Below are positions 7,485 through 50,706 of a DNA stretch of 64,000 bases, piece after piece. Origin of the DNA: Salpingoeca rosetta (taxonomy: Eukaryota; Protista; Choanoflagellata); contig JAWQFM010000013.1 in the NCBI GenBank assembly GCA_033442325.1, forward strand, positions 1,647,160 to 1,711,159, read 5' to 3'. Made by a program: the position numbers and the translations under genes. How positions within the stretch are numbered: position 1 is the first letter of the stretch; each line of letters begins with the position of its first letter. The notes under the pieces were generated by a model that had not been told where the DNA came from, made no database searches, and was given only the letters and a program-made list of their open reading frames with translations.

Positions 7485-8559
7485 ACACACACACCGACAC
7501 CACGTCATGGTGGAGCGCACCTGAAATTCTCCCTTTGAGAACATGAGCGTGGGTTTGTCTGCCACGTCATCGGCGTGCTCCTCAAACCACTGCAGTCAAT
7601 ACAGGAGAATTCAAGAGCACGCCAAAGCACAACACAGCACAACACAGCACGTGCGGCCACAGCAGAGATGAGGAGGAATTGCACCTCATCCACCAAATCA
7701 GCGCCAGCAGAAACTCATGCACAAGAACATGCGTATGCACAAACACACACACACACACACACACCTGCTGAAGTGAGAAGGGTGCGTCCACGGTTGTCGT
7801 TGTGTCGATGTTGATGGGAGTTGGGTCAGTCACGTTCTCTGTAGGAGGCGACAAGAGGCGTGAATATGCGATTGGCTTTGCAGAGGAAGATGGCGTGGTT
7901 TGTGTCTGCACCTGCAAAAAAAAAAAAAAAAAAAAAACACGCGAACACAACAAACAGACAGGCGGACACACGTGGAGGCACGCTTGACACGTGCTTGTTA
8001 TACCTTTGGTTGGAGTGTCTGTCTTGTGCTCTTCGCTGGCAAAGAACCTGGGGAAGGCAACAGCAAGAAGCAGCAGCGCCCCGACAACGGCGACGTGAGT
8101 GTGGGACATCTGCAACAAAAGAAGGAGCAGGAGCAGGAGAATGTGGAAAGAGCAAAGTCCATGCACCAGGCAGACACCCGGACAAACTGGCGGAAGAACG
8201 GCGGGACATACAGACGGACAGATAAGCAGGCAGACACAAAACATGCCCGCACCCACACATGCACACACATGCACACACACATACACACACACATATACAC
8301 ACACATGCAACCCCACACGCACACACACGCACACACACGCATGCACGCACTCGTCAATGACGGGCTTGAGCTGTGTGCCGAGGTCGTAGCAGTGGAACCA
8401 GCGTTCCCAGAGCGGCGTGCTGTCGTCCTGTTTGCGGTAGTAGCGGAGTCCATCAAGCTCCTTCTCGCTGCGCTCGCGCTCAATCACCAGCCCAACCGTG
8501 TCCTCAAACCGCTGTGGGGAGTGGGGAATGCGCCCGGGCAGCACAAAAATCTGCAATCG

Positions 8560-8614
<55 letters not shown>

Positions 8615-8694
8615 GGTTGGAGGGCGTGCGAGAAGCGCAAACGCGAGTCATCTGTACATGGTTCCGTCATGTTGCAGAGGAACACACACACAGA

Positions 8695-8737
<43 letters not shown>

Positions 8738-9465
8738 ACAGACATACACACAGACATACACAAACACAAGCAAAAGCAGCGCGGGTGGCACCTCTCCCTC
8801 CTTGATCTTGACGTCCTTTGGTTTGCCTTGCTCCATGATCTTCAGAACCATGTCTCCCTTGAGCTGGAAGAAGAGCTGCCGTTACCATCGAAGCAGCGCA
8901 GGGGACGAACATGAGTGGCACAGTTGCATGCAGGAAGCAAGTTGTCGTGGCGTAACGGTGTGGTGTGGTGCTAGCAACGAGCACCAACGCAGCCTGCGAG
9001 AGGGGGGGGGAACATGGAGGCGGCAACACTTGCATCCAGTGCCTGCATCCAGGGTTATCACCTCCTCGCCTTCCTCAATGTGGAAGTCCCGGCGGATGTT
9101 TGGTCCACCTACGAACATGATCTTCAACAAGCCATCGCCATGCCTGCTCGCACGCACGCGCACAGCGTATGTGTCACGAAAGTGAGCGGGATGAGTGCTT
9201 CACCACCCACGTGTCAGGAGGCACCGCTGTTTCCTCAACACACTCACACGCACATATTCACGCACACCGCATATATGTATATGTATTCACGCAAACACAG
9301 GTTCACCCACCCACACAAAGCCACCCCCCCACACACACAGTTCCACACACCCACACGCACGCACATACACACACATTCGCTCACGCACATGAGCTTGTTG
9401 CAGACGGGTGGAGCGAAGGATGCCTTGTTCTCCTCCACCCAGCCCTCGATGTTCACCAGTGTCAT
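6747..9465 (-). CDS. HAAO: 3-hydroxyanthranilate 3,4-dioxygenase (kynurenine pathway, de novo NAD+ synthesis); about 10 exons
   Basis: Spliced peptide [108 protein letters not shown]...[30 protein letters not shown]. The Fe ligands (H, E, H) are present. The 3' exons ([30 protein letters not shown]) are less certain. Confidence 0.95.
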
Positions 9466-43746: not shown

Positions 43747-46590
43747 ATGGACGAGATTGACGCGCGTGGTGTGTCGGCGGGGTTCCTGCGCCGGTTCCTG
43801 GAGGAGGTCAAGGCAAGTGACCCAGAGCATTATGCAGCATTGACCACGAAGGACGTGTGCGACAAGATTGTGGTGCCGCACACGAGCGATGAGCGTGCGA
43901 TCGAAGATGTGGGGCACGCGTGCGCGTACGTGGATTTGCTGGCAGCACGCACGCCGCAGGACGTGGCGGCAGCAACCGTGTTTGTCTCGCACGCGTGGCG
44001 CTACAAGCTTGTGGATGTGCTCACCACACTGCTCGAGTTTGCTGACGAAAACAACAGCGAAGAAGATTGCCCCGTCTTCTTTTGGTTTGATCTTTTTATC
44101 AACAACCAACATGAGGACGTCACTGCCAACCTTCCCCAAGAGTGGTGTGTGCGCGTGTGTGCTTTGTTTTGTGTATGTGTGTTTGTGTTTTTGCATGTGT
44201 GTGTGTGTGCGCGAGTTTGTTTACACTTGTACGTGTGCGTGTGTTTGGTTCAGACGTGTATTGTCACCGTGTTACATTGCCCGCCCGCCCAACACCCCCC
44301 CCCCGTCCCCATTCGCCTTCAGCAACGACCTCCTGCCCCCTCCTCGTGTTCTCTCTCACATACAACAACAACAACAACAACAAACAACATCTGCACCTGC
44401 GTGCAGGTGGAGCACGACATTCAAGGAGTCGATTGCACGGATCGGCAAGGTGGTGCTGGTGCTGACACCTTGGGACGACCCCGTGCCACTGACGCGGGCG
44501 TGGTGCCTGTGGGAAATCTTCTGCAGCATCAGCCACGGCGAGGACGTCACGCTCAGCATCCGCCTACCAACCACGCAGCGCGCCGCCCTGCGAGAGGCGC
44601 TGCTGGAGAGCCACGACGCCGTGACAGACACGCTCGTGCGCGTGCAGGCCGAGCGGGCAGAGGCGTGGAATCCAAAGGACAAGGAGATGATCTTCAAGGC
44701 GATTGAGGAGAGTGTCGGCTTTGGGCAGCTGAACCGTGCCGTGAAAGACCAGATGCGCAGCTGGTGCCTGCGGCAGGTGGTGCAGTTTGTGGAGGACATG
44801 GAGGCGCAGGGCCAGGACCGCACAGAGGCGTTCTCCTCGCTGGCATACCAGGCCGCAGTCGCCATGCGCCAGTTTGGCGACCACGCGCGCGCAGCCAACT
44901 TCCTCGGCAAGTGCCTGCGCATTGAGCTTGAGGTGCACGGTCCCCAGCACACCAACGTCGCCGTCACATACGGGCTTCTCGGCCTCCTGCACGAGGACCT
45001 GGGCAAGTACGACCGCGCCGTGCAGCTGCTCGAGTCGTCGCTGGCCATCCACGTCGACACGGCGGGGCCAGACCACCCGCACGCGGCGTCCGCATACAGC
45101 AACTTGGCCGGGGTGCTGAACAAGCTGGGCGAGTACGACCGCGCCGTCGACCTGTACCAGCACAGCCTCGCCATCAACCGCAGGGTGCACGGGGAGGAGC
45201 ACCCGGACACGGCAGGCACGTACAGCAACCTGGGCCTGGTGTACGACAACAAAGGCGACTACGACTGCGCCATTGAGTGCTACGAGCACAGCCTGCGCAT
45301 CAAGCGCGCCACGCTGGGCGCCAAGCACCCGTCGACGGCAACCACGCTGGGCAACCTCGGCCAGGTGTTCGAGGGCGCGGGCCAGTTTGACAGGGCCATT
45401 GAGCTGTACACACAGAGCCTGGACATCAAGCTGGAGACGTTGGGCGAGGACCACCCGTCGACGGCAACCGCGCTGTCCTCGCTCGGCAGCGCCTACGACA
45501 GCGCGGGGCAGCACGACCGCTCCGTGGAATGCTACACGCGCTGCCTGGAGGTGTCGCTGGAGGCGCTTGGGCCCATGCACCCGGACACGGCGCTGACGTA
45601 CGGCAGCCTTGGCAGCGTGTACCACAGCAAAGGCGACTACCCGCGCGCCCTGGAGTGCGGTGAGAAGTGCCTGGCCATCTTGCGCGACACGCTCGGGGAG
45701 CAGCACCCGACGACAGCAGCGGCCATGGAGAACCTGGGCCACCTGCACCACACGCTCGGCGACGCCAGCGCGGCAGCAGACCTGTTCCAGCAGTGCCTGC
45801 GGATTCGGCTGCAGGCGCTCGGGCCAAAGCACCCGTCCACGGGCACGGCGCACAAGAACCTGGGGCTGCTGCACCACGCGCGCGAGCAGCACCCGCTGGC
45901 CATTGCCAGCTACACGGAGTGTCTCGGCGTGTACAGGGAGGCGCTTGGCGAGAACCACCCGACCACGGCATCCGTGTACCGTTCGCTGGGGGACGTACAC
46001 GAGGACATGGAGGACTATGGCGCTGCGATTGAGTGCTTCGACAAGTGCCTGCGCATCTTGCTGGCCACGCTGGGCCGGAACCACACGTTTACCGCCGCTA
46101 CGTACGCGTGCTTGGGCCGCGCGCACCAGAGCAACAGCGAGCACGCGGCGGCGGTGGAGTGCATGGAGCAGGGGCTGGCCATCTGCTTGGAGACGGTGGG
46201 CGAGAAGCACCCAGCAACGGCGTCTGCGTACCACACCCTGGGGCGCGTGCATGATGACCAGGGCCGCCACGACCAGGCCATCGCGTGCTTCGAGAAGGAC
46301 CTGCAGATATCCATCGACACCCTTGGGGAGGACCACCCAGAGACAGCGACCACCTTGCATGCGCTTGCCTGTGTGTATGACAGCAAGGGCGACTATGCTC
46401 GCGCTGCCCACTATGCAGAACGGAGCCTGCAGATCAAACGCAGTGCATTTGGAGAGGAGCATCTCACCACGGTGTGTAGTTGAGGGAGGTAAAGAGGATG
46501 GGGAGGGGTTGGTTGGTTGTGCGCAGTGAGAAGGGTGGGGGGTTATTGTGTGTGTGTATGTGTGTGTATGTGTGTGCGTGCGTGTGTGTG

Positions 46591-46622
<32 letters not shown>

Positions 46623-48325
46623 CGTGTGTGTGTGCGTGTGTGTATGTGTGTCTTGGACGTCAGAAGCCACTGCTCATCCTGATCCTCTTGCCATTCACAT
46701 GCACACACACACGTATACACACACACACACGCACACACACGTATACACACGCAATTTGCCCCCGTGCAGAGCGCGTCGTACTGCCGGCTCGGGAAGATCT
46801 ACGACAGCCTCGGGCGGTATGAGGACGCGTTGGCGTGCCTGGAGAAGGACCTCAAGGCATCCCGCACCGTATTTGGTGATGATCACACGAACACCGCCGC
46901 CACGTTGCTTCGCATCGGTCGGGTGTGCACGCACACGGGAGACTACGACCGTGCCACGTCGTGCCTGCAGCAAAACCTGGCCATTTGCCTCAAGGAGCGG
47001 GGAAACCACCACGCCGATACAGCGGAGGCGTACCTTCGTCTTGGCGAGGCGCAGCACGGCCGCGGTGACCTGGACGATGCCCTCAGCACCCTGACCAGCG
47101 CGCTGGAGGCCTGCCAGGACAAGACGAAGAAGGGTGGTGAGGATGACGAGGGTGGTGAGATGAAGGGTTGCGATGAAGGTAAAGATGGTGATAAGAAGCG
47201 TGGCAGTGAGGGCGGTGAGGGTGGTGAAGGTGGTGAGGGTGAGGATAACAGCAGCGACAAGGGGAAGGGCGAGGAGGAAGATGGGCACAGCAGCAGCAGC
47301 AGCGGTGAAGAAGACGAAGCCACAACAGCGGCCAACAATGGGTATGCAGACGATGGGCAGCGACAACTCGTTGCATCGGTGCACAATGCCCTGGGTGCTC
47401 TCCACCATCGCATGGGCGACTTGGACGCGGCACTGGAGCACCTGGAGACGGCCGAGCAGCTGTACGCGGGAGCGAGTAAGCCACAGCAGCCAGCACCCGC
47501 CGCTGTTGCTGAGGCGTGCGCCAACTTGGGCCGCCTGCACCTCGCGCTTGGAGATGCCGACCGCGCCCTCGACTACCACACGAGGGCGCTGCAGATGTGC
47601 GCCGAGGCGCTGCCTGAAGGACATCCCTCCATTGCTCCCGTGCACAGCGGGCTGGCTCAGGTGCACCATCATCGGAGCGACCCCGCGCCGGCCGCTGAAC
47701 ACGAACAGCAAGCGGTGGCCATTCTCACCGCCGCGTTTGGGCCAGATCATGCGCGCACCAAGGCGGCGCAAGTGCAAGTGCAACACGCCGACACAGACGA
47801 CAAGCACAGCGTGCGTGTGTGTGTGCGTGTGTGCGTGCGTGTGTGTGTGCGTGTGTGTGTGTGTGTGTGTGGAGTGTGTGTGTGTGCATTCTGTTGCCGC
47901 TGCTGCTACTTGTTGCTTGTGCGCAGCGTGTGTTGTTTGCTCGTGCAACTCACATGGTTTGGTTCCTCTCACACGCACGCACATACACACACACACACAT
48001 TACGTAGGGTGCTGCCTTGGACCCGAGTGTACACGCGAGGATGACCGGCTGGCTGCGGAAGCGCGGGCAGTGGAACAAGGCGTTTCGTGCGCGCCATTTT
48101 TGGCTCACGGACGCGGCGCTTGTGTATGGGACGAGCGAGGAAGCCAGCAGCGAGCGGGGACGAATTCACCTGCAGCACATGCAAGCATTGACGCTGAACG
48201 ATGACGGATTGCGACTGCGCGTGCAAGTGCCAAATCGCACATTCGTTCTGCAATGCCACCCCAAGCTGTCGGCCCACTCACTCGAAGACTGGCACGCCGC
48301 TTTGTCACAGCAGATGCCTTCATGA
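43747..48325 (+). CDS. TIR/HET-like domain + about 18 kinesin-light-chain-type 42-aa TPRs + C-terminal PH domain. Exons 43747-44144, 44407-46471, 46770-47810, 48008-48325.
   Basis: N-domain motifs [42 protein letters not shown]. TPRs recur with G-x-x-HP-x-TA-x-x-Y-x-NLG. Last exon [22 protein letters not shown]...LVY...RGRIHL...RTFVLQ...EDWHAAL is a PH domain. All three GT-AG junctions keep the frame. Confidence 0.85.
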
Positions 48326-48415
48326 GATGCGTCCGCGTTTGGTGTGGGTGCGTGTGCGTGTGTGTTTGTGCTTGCGTGCGTGTACGTGCGTGTGTGCGTG
48401 TGTGCGTGTGCGTGC

Positions 48416-48475
<60 letters not shown>

Positions 48476-48832
48476 GTGTGTGCGTGTGTGCGTGTGTGTG
48501 TATGTGTGTGTGCGTGTGTGCGTGTGCGTGTGTGTGTGCGTGTGGGGTGTTTTTTAGGGCGACCACCCTGCGCGGGTTTGCGTGGTCTTTTATCGTGCAT
48601 GGCCCGACAGAAGTGTCGCGTAACGTGCAAGAAATCGTGTGCTATCAACTCAATATCACCACATCACCATATACAAGCAGAAGAGGAGGGCAAACGGCCG
48701 AAAGTAGGAAAGCGGGCATCTTGCACACACACATACACACACATACACGTACACGCACATACACACACACATACACACACATACACGTACACGCACATAC
48801 ACACCAAACACACACACTACACACGGTCGCGT

Positions 48833-50227
48833 TTACATGATCAGGCATTTGCGACAGCCGCTGCTTTCTCCTTCATCGTAGTAGTGCATGGCGCGTGCAA
48901 CCACTTCACCGTTGATGGTGAGCTCACGAATGCTGCGAAGGAGGTCTGGTACGTGGCTGGCAACCAAGCCAAGGTTGAAGTCGTACTTGCAGCGCACGCG
49001 CGGGAAGTTCCGCACAAGCGCAATGTTCTCATCAATGGGGTCATCGGTGGTGAACGTGAGGTCGTTGTTGTAGACGACACCCGTGGCGTCCTCCACCCCA
49101 AAGAAGAAGGTCTCCAGCAGCCTCACGGGGTCCTCCGTCGTGATGAGGCGCGGGTAGAAGGTGACCATCATGCCCCAGTAGAAGGGTTCGGCAATGGACG
49201 CCTGCACGAACGCCAGGTACTTCTCCTCGCTGTGCGTTGTGGATGGGGCGCTGACGTACTCAAACAGCACCGGGCTGAACAGCTTCTCCCCGCCATCGTA
49301 GAGGTTGCGAAGCGTGTTGACAATCTTGCTGCGAAAGTCCGCTGGCACGCGCGTGGAGTAGATGGGCTGCAGGCGCTGGAAGTCCTTGTACTTCTGCTTG
49401 TAGGTGGCGTAGATGTTGGCCACCTTGTCCGCGTCGGTGCTGTACGAGCACTGAATGCCGTGCTTCTCAAACGCAGCCAGGATGGTGTCTGCCGTGTCCA
49501 GCTCTTCAATTTCCGCCAGGTACTCTGGGGCCTGGGAGGCAAAGTCGAAGTAGTTGGCGGGCGTCTTGTCGCGGGCCGCGGACATCTCCTTGACCTCCTG
49601 CATCATGTTCAGCGGAGCGGCGCGCTCCCGCTGGTGCGCGCGGGTGTCGTAAGCCTCGCTCACGTCGTAGAACATGAGCAGGCGCAGCGTGCGCGCGATC
49701 AGCACTTCCACAATGCACCAGCCGCGGGAGAACTCCGAGCCGTCCCACAGGCACACGGTGTACGAGTGCTCGAGGATGGTGTGCAAGTTGCCCATGACCT
49801 GCTGAAACAGCCCTTCCTCCTCTGCAGAGCGCGGGTGCTGCGGCGCGCACGTCCAGTCGAACCAGACGTTGATGTCGTTGAGGTACGCGAAGATGTCTCT
49901 GATGCACTCCTCCGAGAGGCGGGCGGTGTCCAGGAAGGGCTCCAGCAAGGCCACCTCGTCCTTGGTGGGCGTCAAGATGTGCCGGAACAGGTCGTAACCC
50001 ATGCTGCGATCCTGCAGGTACTCCGGGTTGAACATCTTCCAAGGAGCAGAAATGGGGAAGGGAACCGGGGAAGTGGGGGTGGTGACTGGGGGGGGGGGTT
50101 CCGGGGATGAGGGTGTCAAAAGGTCAACGGGGGACTCGACACACGACATGTTACACTGTGCAAGTGTCTAAGTGTGTAGCAAAACGCAGCCACGGCGAGG
50201 GCGATACATACAAACAGATCGCCGCAC

Positions 50228-50290
<63 letters not shown>

Positions 50291-50426
50291 GGCAGGCAGA
50301 CAGACAGACAGACACACACAGACAGATACACAGACAGACACACACACACACAGACAGACAGACACAGACACATACACACAGACAGACACACACACAGACA
50401 CACACAGACAGACAGACAGACAGACA

Positions 50427-50459
<33 letters not shown>

Positions 50460-50706
50460 TGCCCATGCTTGTTTTCTCATCGTCAAGAAATTTGATGTTG
50501 ATGCAACGGTTGATGATGCGAAGGAGACAGCCAACAAACTGCTTGTAGTAGCGGCCGTCATCGGCCTGCTCCTTGCTGAGCCAGCGGTGCGACACAAACA
50601 GGTTCAGTGCGTACGGGTTGAACTCTTGCAAGTCCTTGCGGCAGTCCTGGAACTTGGGGAAGCACCCATACTTGAGCAAATCCACAGCCAAGATGCTAAA
50701 ACTCAT
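48833..50706 (-). CDS. TIR/HET-like domain protein with a C-terminal CaaX prenylation motif. Exons 50706-50458 and 50155-48833.
   Basis: LFVSHRWL (exon 1), then INVWFDWTCAPQ and EFSRGWCIVE (exon 2). The phase-0 AAG|gt...cag|TGT junction is in frame. Ends GCRKCLIM*. Confidence 0.8.
50233..50456. repeat. Intronic (GACA)n/(CA)n microsatellite
   Basis: Directly visible. Confidence 0.9.

What the first reader, a model, noticed from the sequence alone, without database searches (positions are those of the whole stretch)
48833..50706. TIR/HET-like protein ending in a Ras-like lipidation signal (GCRKCLIM*)
Seen: FVSHRW...WFDWTCAPQ...SRGWCIVE motifs, a Pro-rich insertion between the first two motifs, a ~270-aa C-terminal region I do not recognise, and a terminal CLIM with an upstream Cys and basic residues. 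Established: CaaX with X=Met is a farnesylation signal, and a nearby Cys is often palmitoylated. Inference: a membrane-anchored effector with no sensor repeats, possibly the executor partner of neighbouring sensors.
Basis: partly seen in the sequence, partly recalled or inferred. Interest (0 to 1): 0.7.

Follow-up and report, generated by a model that had tools for sequence, protein, structure and literature searches.

The report
Lipid-tailed TIR/HET-like protein of a choanoflagellate
This is a real but almost silent gene of the choanoflagellate Salpingoeca rosetta for a stand-alone enzyme-like domain related to the TIR and HET immune and cell-death domains; it ends in a Ras-type lipid-anchor signal where its closest relatives carry a membrane-binding PH domain.

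Summary
The locus is Salpingoeca rosetta PTSG_05783, a 483-aa hypothetical protein. It has two exons on the minus strand (50706-50458 and 50035-48833).

Confirmed: the three motifs, the terminal GCRKCLIM and the stop codon.

Not confirmed: the "Pro-rich insertion". It is the 3' end of a 422-nt GT..AG intron read through. A 43%-identical relative aligns across the junction without it.

No Pfam, NCBIfam, PADLOC or PDB sequence model matches the N-terminal domain. It belongs to a sharply conserved family (SHxW / WxDxxCxPQ / RxWCxxE) with 153 representatives in protists and bacteria. Its confident AlphaFold model is closest to TIR domains and nucleoside 2-deoxyribosyltransferases (Z 5-7.5). HET is the commonest sub-threshold Pfam hit. 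The invariant W189xxxE193 sits where TIR enzymes carry their catalytic glutamate.

The CaaX box is not conserved. However, four of the closest relatives have a PH domain at that position, and two distant members independently end in canonical CaaX boxes. Membrane tethering therefore looks like the conserved requirement.

RNA reads show only trace expression and no junction reads.

The gene is single-copy and lies in a cluster of receptor-like genes. Nothing links it functionally to those neighbours.

Best reading: a lipid-anchored TIR/HET-like effector, probably enzymatic. Activity and lipidation are untested.

Other notes of this scan, untested here, report CaaX tails on other TIR-type proteins of this genome.

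The parts
50458..50706 (-). Exon 1 (residues 1-83): N-terminal strand and helix, motif 1 FVSHRW (50598-50581) and D49
   Evidence: The N-terminus MSFS.. matches relative P0002 MSFT... The match to the A3 profile has E 2e-13.
50036..50457 (-). Intron, 422 nt, GT..AG, filled with (TG)n/(TCTG)n microsatellites. Its 3' end was misread as a Pro-rich insertion.
   Evidence: The relative P0002 aligns across the junction without the Pro-rich stretch. No junction reads were available.
49385..50035 (-). Exon 2, first part (residues 84-300): rest of the TIR/HET-like domain, with motif 2 WFDWTCAPQ (49864-49838), motif 3 SRGWCIVE including W189xxxE193 (49729-49706), and a helical extension ending in the family-wide G-x-x-C-S/T...D..VA element
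   Evidence: conservation; pLDDT above 90 over most of residues 1-300; TIR and 2-deoxyribosyltransferase structures are the top matches.
48890..49384 (-). Exon 2, subfamily-specific C-terminal region (residues about 301-465), fold unknown
   Evidence: Shared only with P0002-P0008. No Pfam hit. pLDDT below 50. No Atlas lead.
48836..48889 (-). Predicted flexible tail (residues 466-483) ending G-C476-R-K-C480-L-I-M. This is a CaaX box (CLIM) with a second Cys four residues upstream and two basic residues.
   Evidence: pLDDT 33-43. It aligns with the start of the PH domain of the relatives.
48833..48835 (-). Stop codon TAA, followed by a (TG)n-rich 3' region that overlaps the plus-strand 3' UTR of the convergent neighbour gene
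   Evidence: Plus-strand RNA reads cover 48000-48787. No remnant of a PH domain lies downstream.

Best explanation
PTSG_05783 is an intact, single-copy, two-exon gene. It encodes a stand-alone effector of 483 residues in three parts.

1. Residues 1-300 form a TIR/HET-like alpha/beta domain of a family with no library model, here called SHRW-type. All family-invariant residues are kept, including a WxxxE element on the helix after the third strand. That is the position of the catalytic glutamate in TIR NAD-cleaving enzymes.
2. Residues 301-465 are a subfamily-specific region of unknown fold.
3. The last residues are a disordered tail ending in a farnesylation box (CLIM), preceded by a possibly palmitoylated Cys and two basic residues.

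Inferred mechanism: the protein is prenylated and sits on the cytoplasmic face of a membrane. There its TIR/HET-like domain acts as an enzyme, most likely on NAD+ or a related nucleotide, in a defence or cell-death pathway. It is kept almost untranscribed in ordinary culture. Relatives in other protists achieve the same membrane placement with a C-terminal PH domain.

Shown: the gene structure, the family, the fold class, the conserved residues, the tail sequence, the PH domain in relatives and the low expression. Inferred: lipidation, membrane localisation, enzymatic activity and biological role.
For: Gene model:
- Exons 50706-50458 and 50035-48833 translate exactly to P0001.
- P0002 (43% identity) aligns from Met1 across the exon junction.

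Family:
- Exhaustive HMMER search found 153 hits, 9 below 1e-30.
- Twelve positions are at least 90% conserved, and P0001 keeps all of them.

Fold:
- AlphaFold model of the N-domain: pLDDT 86, pTM 0.82.
- Top structural matches are SpbK TIR (Z 7.5), Hydra TRR-2 TIR, IL-1RAcPb, ThsB, MyD88, SARM1 and nucleoside 2-deoxyribosyltransferases, at Z 5-7.
- In the Atlas the same fold is fused to Ank, LRR, TPR and MORN repeats, and it resembles HET and ThsB_TIR clusters.
- HET is the most frequent sub-threshold Pfam hit, in 4 of 56 members.
- With the family-specific insertion removed, an HMM-HMM alignment to S. rosetta TIR_2 domains pairs SHRW with SYxW, WxD with WxD, and RxWCxxE with SxxCxxE (E 0.01, weak).

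Membrane targeting:
- Canonical CaaX box at the terminus.
- Three loci for prenyltransferase beta subunits in the genome.
- Relatives P0002, P0004, P0005 and P0008 extend into a PH domain exactly where P0001 stops. P0008 scores 31.6 bits against a Pfam PH cut-off of 25.1. A profile of these C-termini hits PH domains in the PDB in 8 of 9 matches.
- Two of the other 149 family representatives end in canonical CaaX boxes, against 0.09 expected (P about 0.004).
- The sampled copies of the other HET-like family of this genome end in PH domains or Cys-rich hydrophobic tails.

Expression: only a few reads, on the expected strand, out of about 46 million read.
Against: - No RNA read spans the junction or the 3' end, so the stop is supported only by the genome, the annotation and the lack of room downstream.
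- The CaaX box is absent from every close relative. It could be a chance by-product of truncation at the start of a lost PH domain. Such a tetrapeptide occurs at about 6 in 10,000 positions, so several chance cases are expected in any proteome.
- ICMT was not detected by its Pfam model. The search was exon by exon, so this is not conclusive.
- Structural Z-scores are below 8, which the tool calls middling. Foldseek found nothing significant.
- No TIR or HET Pfam model reaches its threshold.
- No biochemical activity is known even for fungal HET domains (PMC10890737).
- Near-silence in RNA-seq is also compatible with a decaying gene.
Confidence: 0.5

Rival explanations
1. The CaaX box is fortuitous. 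The S. rosetta gene is a truncated descendant of a PH-bearing ancestor that lost its membrane module. The protein is cytosolic, or the gene is drifting towards loss, and the CLIM ending has no function.
For: - Close relatives lack CaaX and have a PH domain instead. The S. rosetta tail aligns with the first residues of that PH region.
- No PH remnant is left downstream.
- Expression is near zero.
- Chance CaaX-like termini are expected in any proteome; the internal frequency is 6e-4.
Against: - The reading frame is intact over 483 codons and every family-invariant residue is kept.
- The ending is more than a bare CaaX. It has a second Cys and basic residues, as in the Ras hypervariable regions (established knowledge).
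- CaaX endings recur in the family beyond expectation.
- Membrane modules are the rule at the C-termini of the HET-like proteins sampled in this genome.
Confidence: 0.25
2. The domain is a non-catalytic adaptor. It is tethered to the membrane and nucleates or receives homotypic assemblies with the HET-like domains of the TPR receptors encoded next door (at least 62 copies genome-wide). This is the first reader's 'executor partner' idea, and resembles how TRAM and MAL bridge Toll-like receptors.
For: - The gene lies between a HET-like+TPR+PH gene (43747-48325) and Roco-PARP and Roco-TIR genes.
- The two HET-like families share motifs 1 and 3 (hhalign E 1e-4, probability 57%).
- TIR domains often act through homotypic filaments; several of the top structural matches are filament structures.
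Against: - There is no co-expression or interaction evidence.
- The strict invariance of about 12 polar and aromatic residues from bacteria to protists is typical of an active site, not of an adaptor surface.
- The close relative examined sits beside an acetyltransferase gene, not a recognisable sensor.
- The A3 profile does not detect the neighbour family at E <= 0.01, so the two domains are distant.
Confidence: 0.1
3. The protein is not an immune or death effector. It is a conserved membrane-associated metabolic or signalling enzyme of the wider TIR / 2-deoxyribosyltransferase fold class, for example one that processes nucleosides or nucleotides, and it merely happens to lie in a receptor gene cluster.
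For: - It is single-copy in S. rosetta, unlike the expanded receptor families.
- It is 43% identical to a protein filed under a chrysophyte transcriptome in EukProt (Epipyxis sp.; provenance not checked), with a conserved architecture. That suggests purifying rather than diversifying selection.
- Nucleoside 2-deoxyribosyltransferases score as well as TIR domains in the fold search.
Against: - A housekeeping enzyme would be expected to be expressed, and this gene is nearly silent.
- Elsewhere the domain is fused to Ank, LRR, TPR and MORN repeat arrays.
- In bacteria it sits in a two-gene cassette with a TPR-like protein and with varying flanks, as conflict systems often do.
- Several close relatives have lost the invariant residues, which is unusual for a core enzyme.
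Confidence: 0.1

Closest known systems
TIR domains with NAD+-cleaving activity (SARM1, plant TIR receptors, bacterial ThsB, SpbK and AbTir)
   Same: - Same fold class and strand/helix order.
- Best structural matches (Z 5-7.5).
- A WxxxE element on the helix after the third strand, where these enzymes have their catalytic Glu (placement from established knowledge; positions).
- Occurs both alone and fused to repeat arrays.
   Different: - No Pfam TIR or TIR_2 match at threshold.
- A helical insertion of roughly 50 residues between the first and second strands, plus an N-terminal strand/helix and a helical C-terminal extension to about residue 300.
- A different set of invariant residues: SHxW, D49, WxD, PQ, RxWC.
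- Activity unknown.
Fungal HET domain (Pfam PF06985), the cell-death domain of heterokaryon incompatibility
   Same: - Three-block pattern (hydrophobic-S-x-x-W / W-x-D-x-x-C-x-x-Q / R-x-W-x-x-x-E).
- HET is the commonest sub-threshold Pfam hit of the family (one member at E 0.002).
- The Atlas HET cluster resembles the model (TM 0.47).
- HET is itself regarded as a remote TIR relative with unknown mechanism (PMC10197012, PMC10890737).
   Different: - P0001 itself does not match PF06985.
- The family is found in protists and bacteria rather than being specific to fungi.
- A C-terminal lipid box or PH domain instead of NACHT/WD40, lectin or other fungal partner domains.
Membrane-sorted TIR adaptors of animals: TRAM (N-myristoylated) and MAL/TIRAP (phosphoinositide-binding)
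   Same: Two alternative devices, a covalent lipid or phosphoinositide binding, place a small TIR-type protein on a membrane. This parallels CaaX in S. rosetta versus PH in its relatives. The facts about the adaptors come from established knowledge.
   Different: - Those proteins are canonical, largely non-catalytic TIR adaptors, with the targeting device at the N-terminus.
- Here the domain is a divergent, probably catalytic family, the device is C-terminal, and no upstream receptor is known.
Ras-family hypervariable tails (H-Ras, N-Ras, K-Ras4B)
   Same: C-terminal Cys-aliphatic-aliphatic-Met, with a second Cys a few residues upstream and basic residues, on a disordered tail. That X = Met directs farnesylation is established knowledge.
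   Different: The tail is attached to a TIR/HET-like domain, not a GTPase. Lipidation is untested, and the box is not conserved in orthologue-like relatives.

Membership tests
TIR domain (Pfam PF01582 / PF13676) | Sequence match to the family models above the curated cut-off | tested here: not met
   No TIR hit for P0001 or P0002, even at E <= 10. One of 56 family members has a sub-threshold hit at E 0.061. A profile search against PDB sequences found nothing.
TIR domain (Pfam PF01582 / PF13676) | Flavodoxin-like fold with parallel strands in the TIR order (bA-aA-bB-loop-aB-bC-aC-bD) | tested here: met
   The model has pLDDT 86. About 17 of the top 22 structural matches are TIR (or the related SEFIR) domains or nucleoside 2-deoxyribosyltransferases, at Z 5.2-7.5 over about 95-110 residues. 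The Z-scores are moderate and Foldseek alone was not significant.
TIR domain (Pfam PF01582 / PF13676) | Catalytic glutamate in a WxxxE-type element at the start of helix C | tested here: inconclusive
   W189 and E193 are at least 90% conserved or invariant and lie on helix 188-199, after strand 175-180. They align with the SxxCxxE glutamate of S. rosetta TIR_2 domains only in a weak HMM-HMM alignment (E 0.01). No residue-level superposition was possible.
TIR domain (Pfam PF01582 / PF13676) | NAD+ hydrolase or cyclase activity | not testable with these tools
   Needs an enzyme assay.
HET domain (Pfam PF06985) | Match to PF06985 above 22.5 bits | tested here: not met
   No hit for P0001 or anywhere in the genome, but that search's control did not ring either, so it is uninformative. 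Four of 56 family members have sub-threshold hits, best E 0.026 (0.0022 for one whole protein).
HET domain (Pfam PF06985) | Three conserved blocks in order, ending in R-G-W-x-x-x-E | tested here: met
   FVSHRW, WFDWTCAPQ and SRGWCIVE occur in that order. The comparison with the HET blocks rests on established knowledge of the family, not on an alignment made here.
HET domain (Pfam PF06985) | Induces cell death when expressed | not testable with these tools
   Needs expression experiments.
CaaX-prenylated proteins | Cys at position -4, two aliphatic residues, and X = Met/Ser/Gln/Ala/Cys at the true C-terminus | tested here: met
   C480-L-I-M is followed by TAA at 48835-48833. That this is the end of the mature mRNA is not confirmed by reads.
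CaaX-prenylated proteins | Prenylation and processing machinery encoded in the genome | tested here: inconclusive
   Prenyltransferase beta-subunit repeats are found at three loci, best E 8e-81. The ICMT Pfam model found nothing in the exon-by-exon search. Rce1 and the alpha subunit were not searched.
CaaX-prenylated proteins | Box conserved in orthologues | tested here: not met
   None of P0002-P0009 ends in CaaX. Four of them have a PH domain instead. Two distant members have CIIL and CVML.
CaaX-prenylated proteins | Actual lipid attachment and membrane localisation | not testable with these tools
   Needs labelling and imaging.
SHRW-type TIR/HET-like family (defined here) | All twelve conserved positions present (S39 H40 W42 D49 W141 D143 P148 Q149 R187 W189 C190 E193) | tested here: met
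   P0001 has the full signature. The profile matches both exons at E 1e-29 and 2e-13.

The most novel reading that the evidence does not exclude
The SHRW-type domain is an undescribed, pan-kingdom branch of the TIR/HET superfamily. It occurs in Streptomyces, Variovorax, cyanobacteria, haptophytes, chrysophytes and choanoflagellates, and has its own catalytic constellation (S-H, D, W-D, P-Q, R-W-C-E). Its stand-alone protist members would be constitutively membrane-tethered death or signalling enzymes, anchored by prenyl or PH. The single-copy, genetically tractable S. rosetta gene would then be a way to discover the long-unknown biochemical activity of HET-type cell-death domains.
Probability: 0.25. 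Interest if true: 0.7.

Novelty: new variant of a known kind. Interest (0 to 1): 0.45.

Why it matters
How HET-type domains kill cells is still unknown, although they are among the most abundant death domains in fungi and are thought to be remote TIR relatives (PMC10197012, PMC10890737).

This locus shows that a sharply conserved HET/TIR-like family, one that four curated libraries do not model, reaches from bacteria to the closest unicellular relatives of animals. In one lineage it is a small, single-copy, sensor-free protein whose only other recognisable feature is a membrane-targeting signal.

That is a simple object for testing two things: whether such domains are enzymes, and whether their site of action is a membrane. 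The exchange of a CaaX box for a PH domain is also a clean natural experiment on membrane targeting of TIR-type effectors.

If the CaaX box proves to be accidental, the gene is just one more unstudied hypothetical protein in an immune-receptor-like gene cluster.

Tried and rejected
- RNA evidence for the splice junction and 3' end. Three raw RNA runs gave only about 3-4 reads on the gene and no joints.
- A contig joint in run X1 (48233->51439) that would delete the whole gene. Its shorter side is only 21 nt, both ends lie at microsatellites, and X1 also holds the gene itself. I treat it as an assembly artefact.
- Pfam, NCBIfam and PADLOC scans of P0001 and relatives: nothing.
- PDB sequence-profile search with the domain alignment: nothing.
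- Foldseek against PDB: nothing significant.
- hhalign of the full domain profile against nine S. rosetta TIR_2 domains aligned only motif 1. After removing the family-specific insertion it aligned end to end, but weakly.
- The idea that the neighbour gene's plus-strand PH exon (48017-48325) is the captured PH of this gene. There is no similarity to the PH region of the relative tested, P0002. RNA reads splice that exon to the TPR gene.
- Search for a degenerate PH remnant downstream of the stop, or anywhere in the window: none.
- C-terminal region 300-483: no Pfam hit, no Atlas lead, and the AlphaFold model is unreliable there.
- Alternative acceptor at 50155, which would keep the Pro-rich stretch in frame. 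Rejected because the relative has no such stretch and the annotated protein uses 50035.
- The first attempt at a genome-collection scan with the broad alignment failed for lack of conserved stretches. A narrower bacterial alignment worked.
- No self-joined spliced model was sent to any search. The exons were searched by reference. The full-length searches used the database protein P0001 returned. Its identity to the joined exons was checked only in a local script.
Full report
**Identity and gene model.** The window is Salpingoeca rosetta DNA (G000:C13:1647160-1711159). The finding coincides with the annotated hypothetical protein PTSG_05783 (P0001, 483 aa), which a word-based protein search returned for the exon-2 ORF. 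The minus-strand sequence and a local script give this model:
- exon 1 at 50706-50458 (83 codons);
- an intron at 50457-50036 (422 nt, GT..AG), full of (TG)n/(TCTG)n microsatellites and ending in a polypyrimidine tract;
- exon 2 at 50035-48833, including the TAA stop.

The joined translation equals P0001 exactly. I sent no self-joined model to any search tool. The exons were searched by reference, and the full-length searches used the database entry P0001.

**Checking the observation.** The "Pro-rich insertion" is not part of the protein. It arises from reading ORF 48833-50149 from its own ATG, through the last ~115 nt of the intron. The closest full-length relative is P0002 (639 aa, filed under the chrysophyte Epipyxis in EukProt). 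It is 43% identical, aligns from Met1 across the exon junction, and has no Pro-rich stretch there. The start codon is supported by the shared N-terminus (MSFS.. versus MSFT..).

**Expression.** About 46 million raw RNA reads from three runs of the species were laid on 5,901 bases. They put only some 3-4 reads on the gene, on the strand expected for a minus-strand transcript. The flanking genes reach depths of 1-6. No read crosses the junction or defines the 3' end. Plus-strand reads cover 48000-48787, so the convergent neighbour's 3' UTR comes to within about 50 nt of the stop. No further exon of the subfamily's PH type was found downstream.

**The N-terminal domain.**
- Library searches were empty. 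Pfam, NCBIfam and PADLOC have no model that matches P0001 or its relatives. A profile search of PDB sequences found nothing.
- An exhaustive HMMER search of 1.84 billion representatives found 153 proteins at E <= 0.001. Nine were below 1e-30 and share the whole architecture. The rest share only residues about 1-300.
- Twelve positions are invariant or at least 90% conserved across 150 representatives: S39, H40, W42, D49, W141, D143, P148, Q149, R187, W189, C190, E193. P0001 keeps all of them. Several of its closest relatives (P0003, P0004, P0005, P0007) have lost some.
- With a 56-sequence domain alignment, AlphaFold gives a confident model (pLDDT 86, pTM 0.82). The full-length model is confident to about residue 300 and unreliable beyond.
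- Foldseek against PDB found nothing significant. An all-against-representatives structural alignment put TIR domains and nucleoside 2-deoxyribosyltransferases at the top: SpbK at Z 7.5, then Hydra TRR-2, IL-1RAcPb, ThsB, MyD88, SARM1, MAL and TIR-1, at Z 5-7. The tool calls these scores middling, but the list is coherent.
- In the ESM Atlas the same fold occurs fused to ankyrin, LRR, TPR and MORN arrays in haptophytes and ascomycetes. It also resembles HET and ThsB_TIR clusters.
- HET is the commonest sub-threshold Pfam hit among members.
- In the model's secondary structure, SHRW sits on the first core strand, WxD on the second, and RxWCxxE opens the helix after the third. I know of no other place for the catalytic glutamate of TIR enzymes (the WxxxE element of SARM1 and plant TIRs) than this position; that is established knowledge, not tested here.
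- Canonical TIR_2 domains of the same genome read SYxW / WxD / SxxCxxE at the corresponding places. With the family-specific insertion removed, an HMM-HMM alignment pairs all three blocks, but only at E 0.01.

I therefore call the domain TIR/HET-like in fold and motif logic, but not a member of either Pfam family.

**Distribution.**
- The family is not confined to eukaryotes. Contigs carrying members have bacterial neighbours. A pattern scan of one genome per prokaryotic species found 39 loci, in Streptomyces, Lentzea, Nocardia, Saccharopolyspora, Variovorax, Trueperaceae, Acidobacteriota, cyanobacteria and others.
- In three unrelated bacterial contigs the ~735-aa protein is followed by a ~300-aa TPR-like ORF, which overlaps it in the two loci where I mapped the ORFs. 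The flanking genes differ between the contigs.
- In S. rosetta this subfamily is single-copy. A different HET-like family, fused to TPR arrays, has at least 62 genomic matches. The neighbour gene at 43747-48325 is one of these.

**The C-terminus.**
- Residues about 301-465 are conserved only within the close subfamily and have no recognisable fold.
- The last 18 residues are predicted disordered. They end in C476-R-K-C480-L-I-M.
- By established rules, Cys-aliphatic-aliphatic-Met is a farnesyltransferase substrate, and a nearby Cys is a typical second, palmitoylated site, as in H-Ras and N-Ras.
- The genome encodes prenyltransferase beta subunits at three loci. ICMT was not picked up by its Pfam model, which is inconclusive in an exon-by-exon search.
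- None of the close relatives has a CaaX box.
- However, four of the closest relatives (P0002, P0004, P0005, P0008) continue into a further domain exactly where P0001 stops. That domain is a PH domain: P0008 scores 31.6 bits against a Pfam cut-off of 25.1, and a profile of the four C-termini hits PH domains in 8 of 9 PDB matches.
- The S. rosetta tail aligns with the first residues of that PH region. No PH remnant lies downstream.
- Two of the other 149 family representatives end in canonical boxes (CIIL, CVML), against 0.09 expected from the internal frequency of such tetrapeptides (Poisson P about 0.004).
- The sampled copies of the TPR-fused HET-like family in this genome end in PH domains or in Cys-rich hydrophobic tails.
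- Other notes of this scan, which I did not test, report CaaX boxes on several TIR-type proteins of this genome.

Taken together, a membrane address at the C-terminus looks like the conserved property, and CaaX is a plausible local replacement for PH. I put about 60% on the box being used.

**Context.** From about 43.7 kb to the end of the window, every gene is receptor-like:
- HET-like+TPR+PH (plus strand);
- this gene;
- a Roco gene ending in a PARP domain (PARP hit at E 3e-10);
- a Roco-TIR-SAM gene.

The first 43 kb holds ordinary genes: WD40, 3-hydroxyanthranilate dioxygenase and a lectin/Fringe glycosyltransferase. Adjacency is the only link between PTSG_05783 and these sensors. The contig examined for one close relative shows an acetyltransferase neighbour and no sensor.

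**Interpretation.** The best-supported reading is a stand-alone TIR/HET-like effector that is tethered to a membrane by farnesylation, possibly with palmitoylation as well. It probably acts as an enzyme on NAD+ or a related nucleotide, and it is transcriptionally silent under standard culture.
- Shown: the gene model, the family with its invariant residues, the fold class, the tail sequence, the PH domain in relatives, single-copy status and trace expression.
- Inferred: lipidation, localisation, catalysis and a defence or death role.
- Rivals: a fortuitous CaaX on a truncated protein (0.25); a non-catalytic adaptor for the neighbouring receptors (0.1); a non-immune membrane enzyme (0.1).

**Comparison and novelty.** TIR-type proteins placed on membranes by a lipid or by phosphoinositide binding are known (TRAM and MAL, from established knowledge), and HET is accepted as a remote TIR relative. 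The kind is therefore known. What appears new is:
- the family itself, which has no model in four libraries and spans bacteria to choanoflagellates;
- its distinctive invariant residues;
- the sensor-free architecture in which CaaX and PH alternate.

I rate it a new variant of a known kind, with moderate interest.

Noticed in passing
window 43747-48325 (+) and at least 61 other places in the genome (loci L019-L058): The neighbour gene belongs to a HET-like+TPR family with at least 62 genomic matches to its first exon. Sampled copies end either in a PH domain or in a Cys-rich hydrophobic tail, so C-terminal membrane modules seem to be the rule in this family.
   Followed up: partly
L049-L057 (paralogues of the neighbour gene): Long 'intronless' open frames of 700-1000 aa are an illusion. 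The (TG)n-rich introns stay open in one frame and read as CVCVCV... runs. Raw ORF lengths therefore overstate exon sizes in this genome.
   Followed up: yes
L059:6475-9597, L064:3377-6504, L067:3407-6510 (bacterial contigs): Bacterial members of the SHRW-type family (~735 aa, with a conserved HPGGLFR-like C-terminal motif) are followed by a ~300-aa TPR-like ORF, which overlaps them in L064 and L067, and the flanking genes are unrelated. This looks like a mobile two-gene effector+TPR cassette. No PADLOC or NCBIfam model matched the family members scanned.
   Followed up: partly
window 48233 -> 51439: One contig of run X1 (probably DNA) joins these two points and skips 3205 nt that contain the whole gene. 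The shorter side is only 21 nt and both ends are at microsatellites. X1 also holds the gene itself, so this is probably an assembly artefact and not a deletion allele.
   Followed up: partly
window 48008 (+): RNA reads of three runs carry the same upstream sequence spliced onto 48008. This shows that the PH exon at 48017-48325 is joined to the TPR gene on the plus strand, and that its 3' UTR runs to about 48787, close to the stop of PTSG_05783.
   Followed up: partly
G000:C25:201603-201815 (+), locus L005: This is the only other S. rosetta match to the SHRW-type profile. It is weak (E 0.005), covers motifs 2-3 only, and lies in a 532-aa open frame. It was not examined further.
   Followed up: no
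window 7585-8769 (-): An ordinary 3-hydroxyanthranilate dioxygenase gene (NAD+ biosynthesis) lies 40 kb from the cluster of NAD-related effector genes (PARP, TIR). This is most likely coincidence.
   Followed up: no
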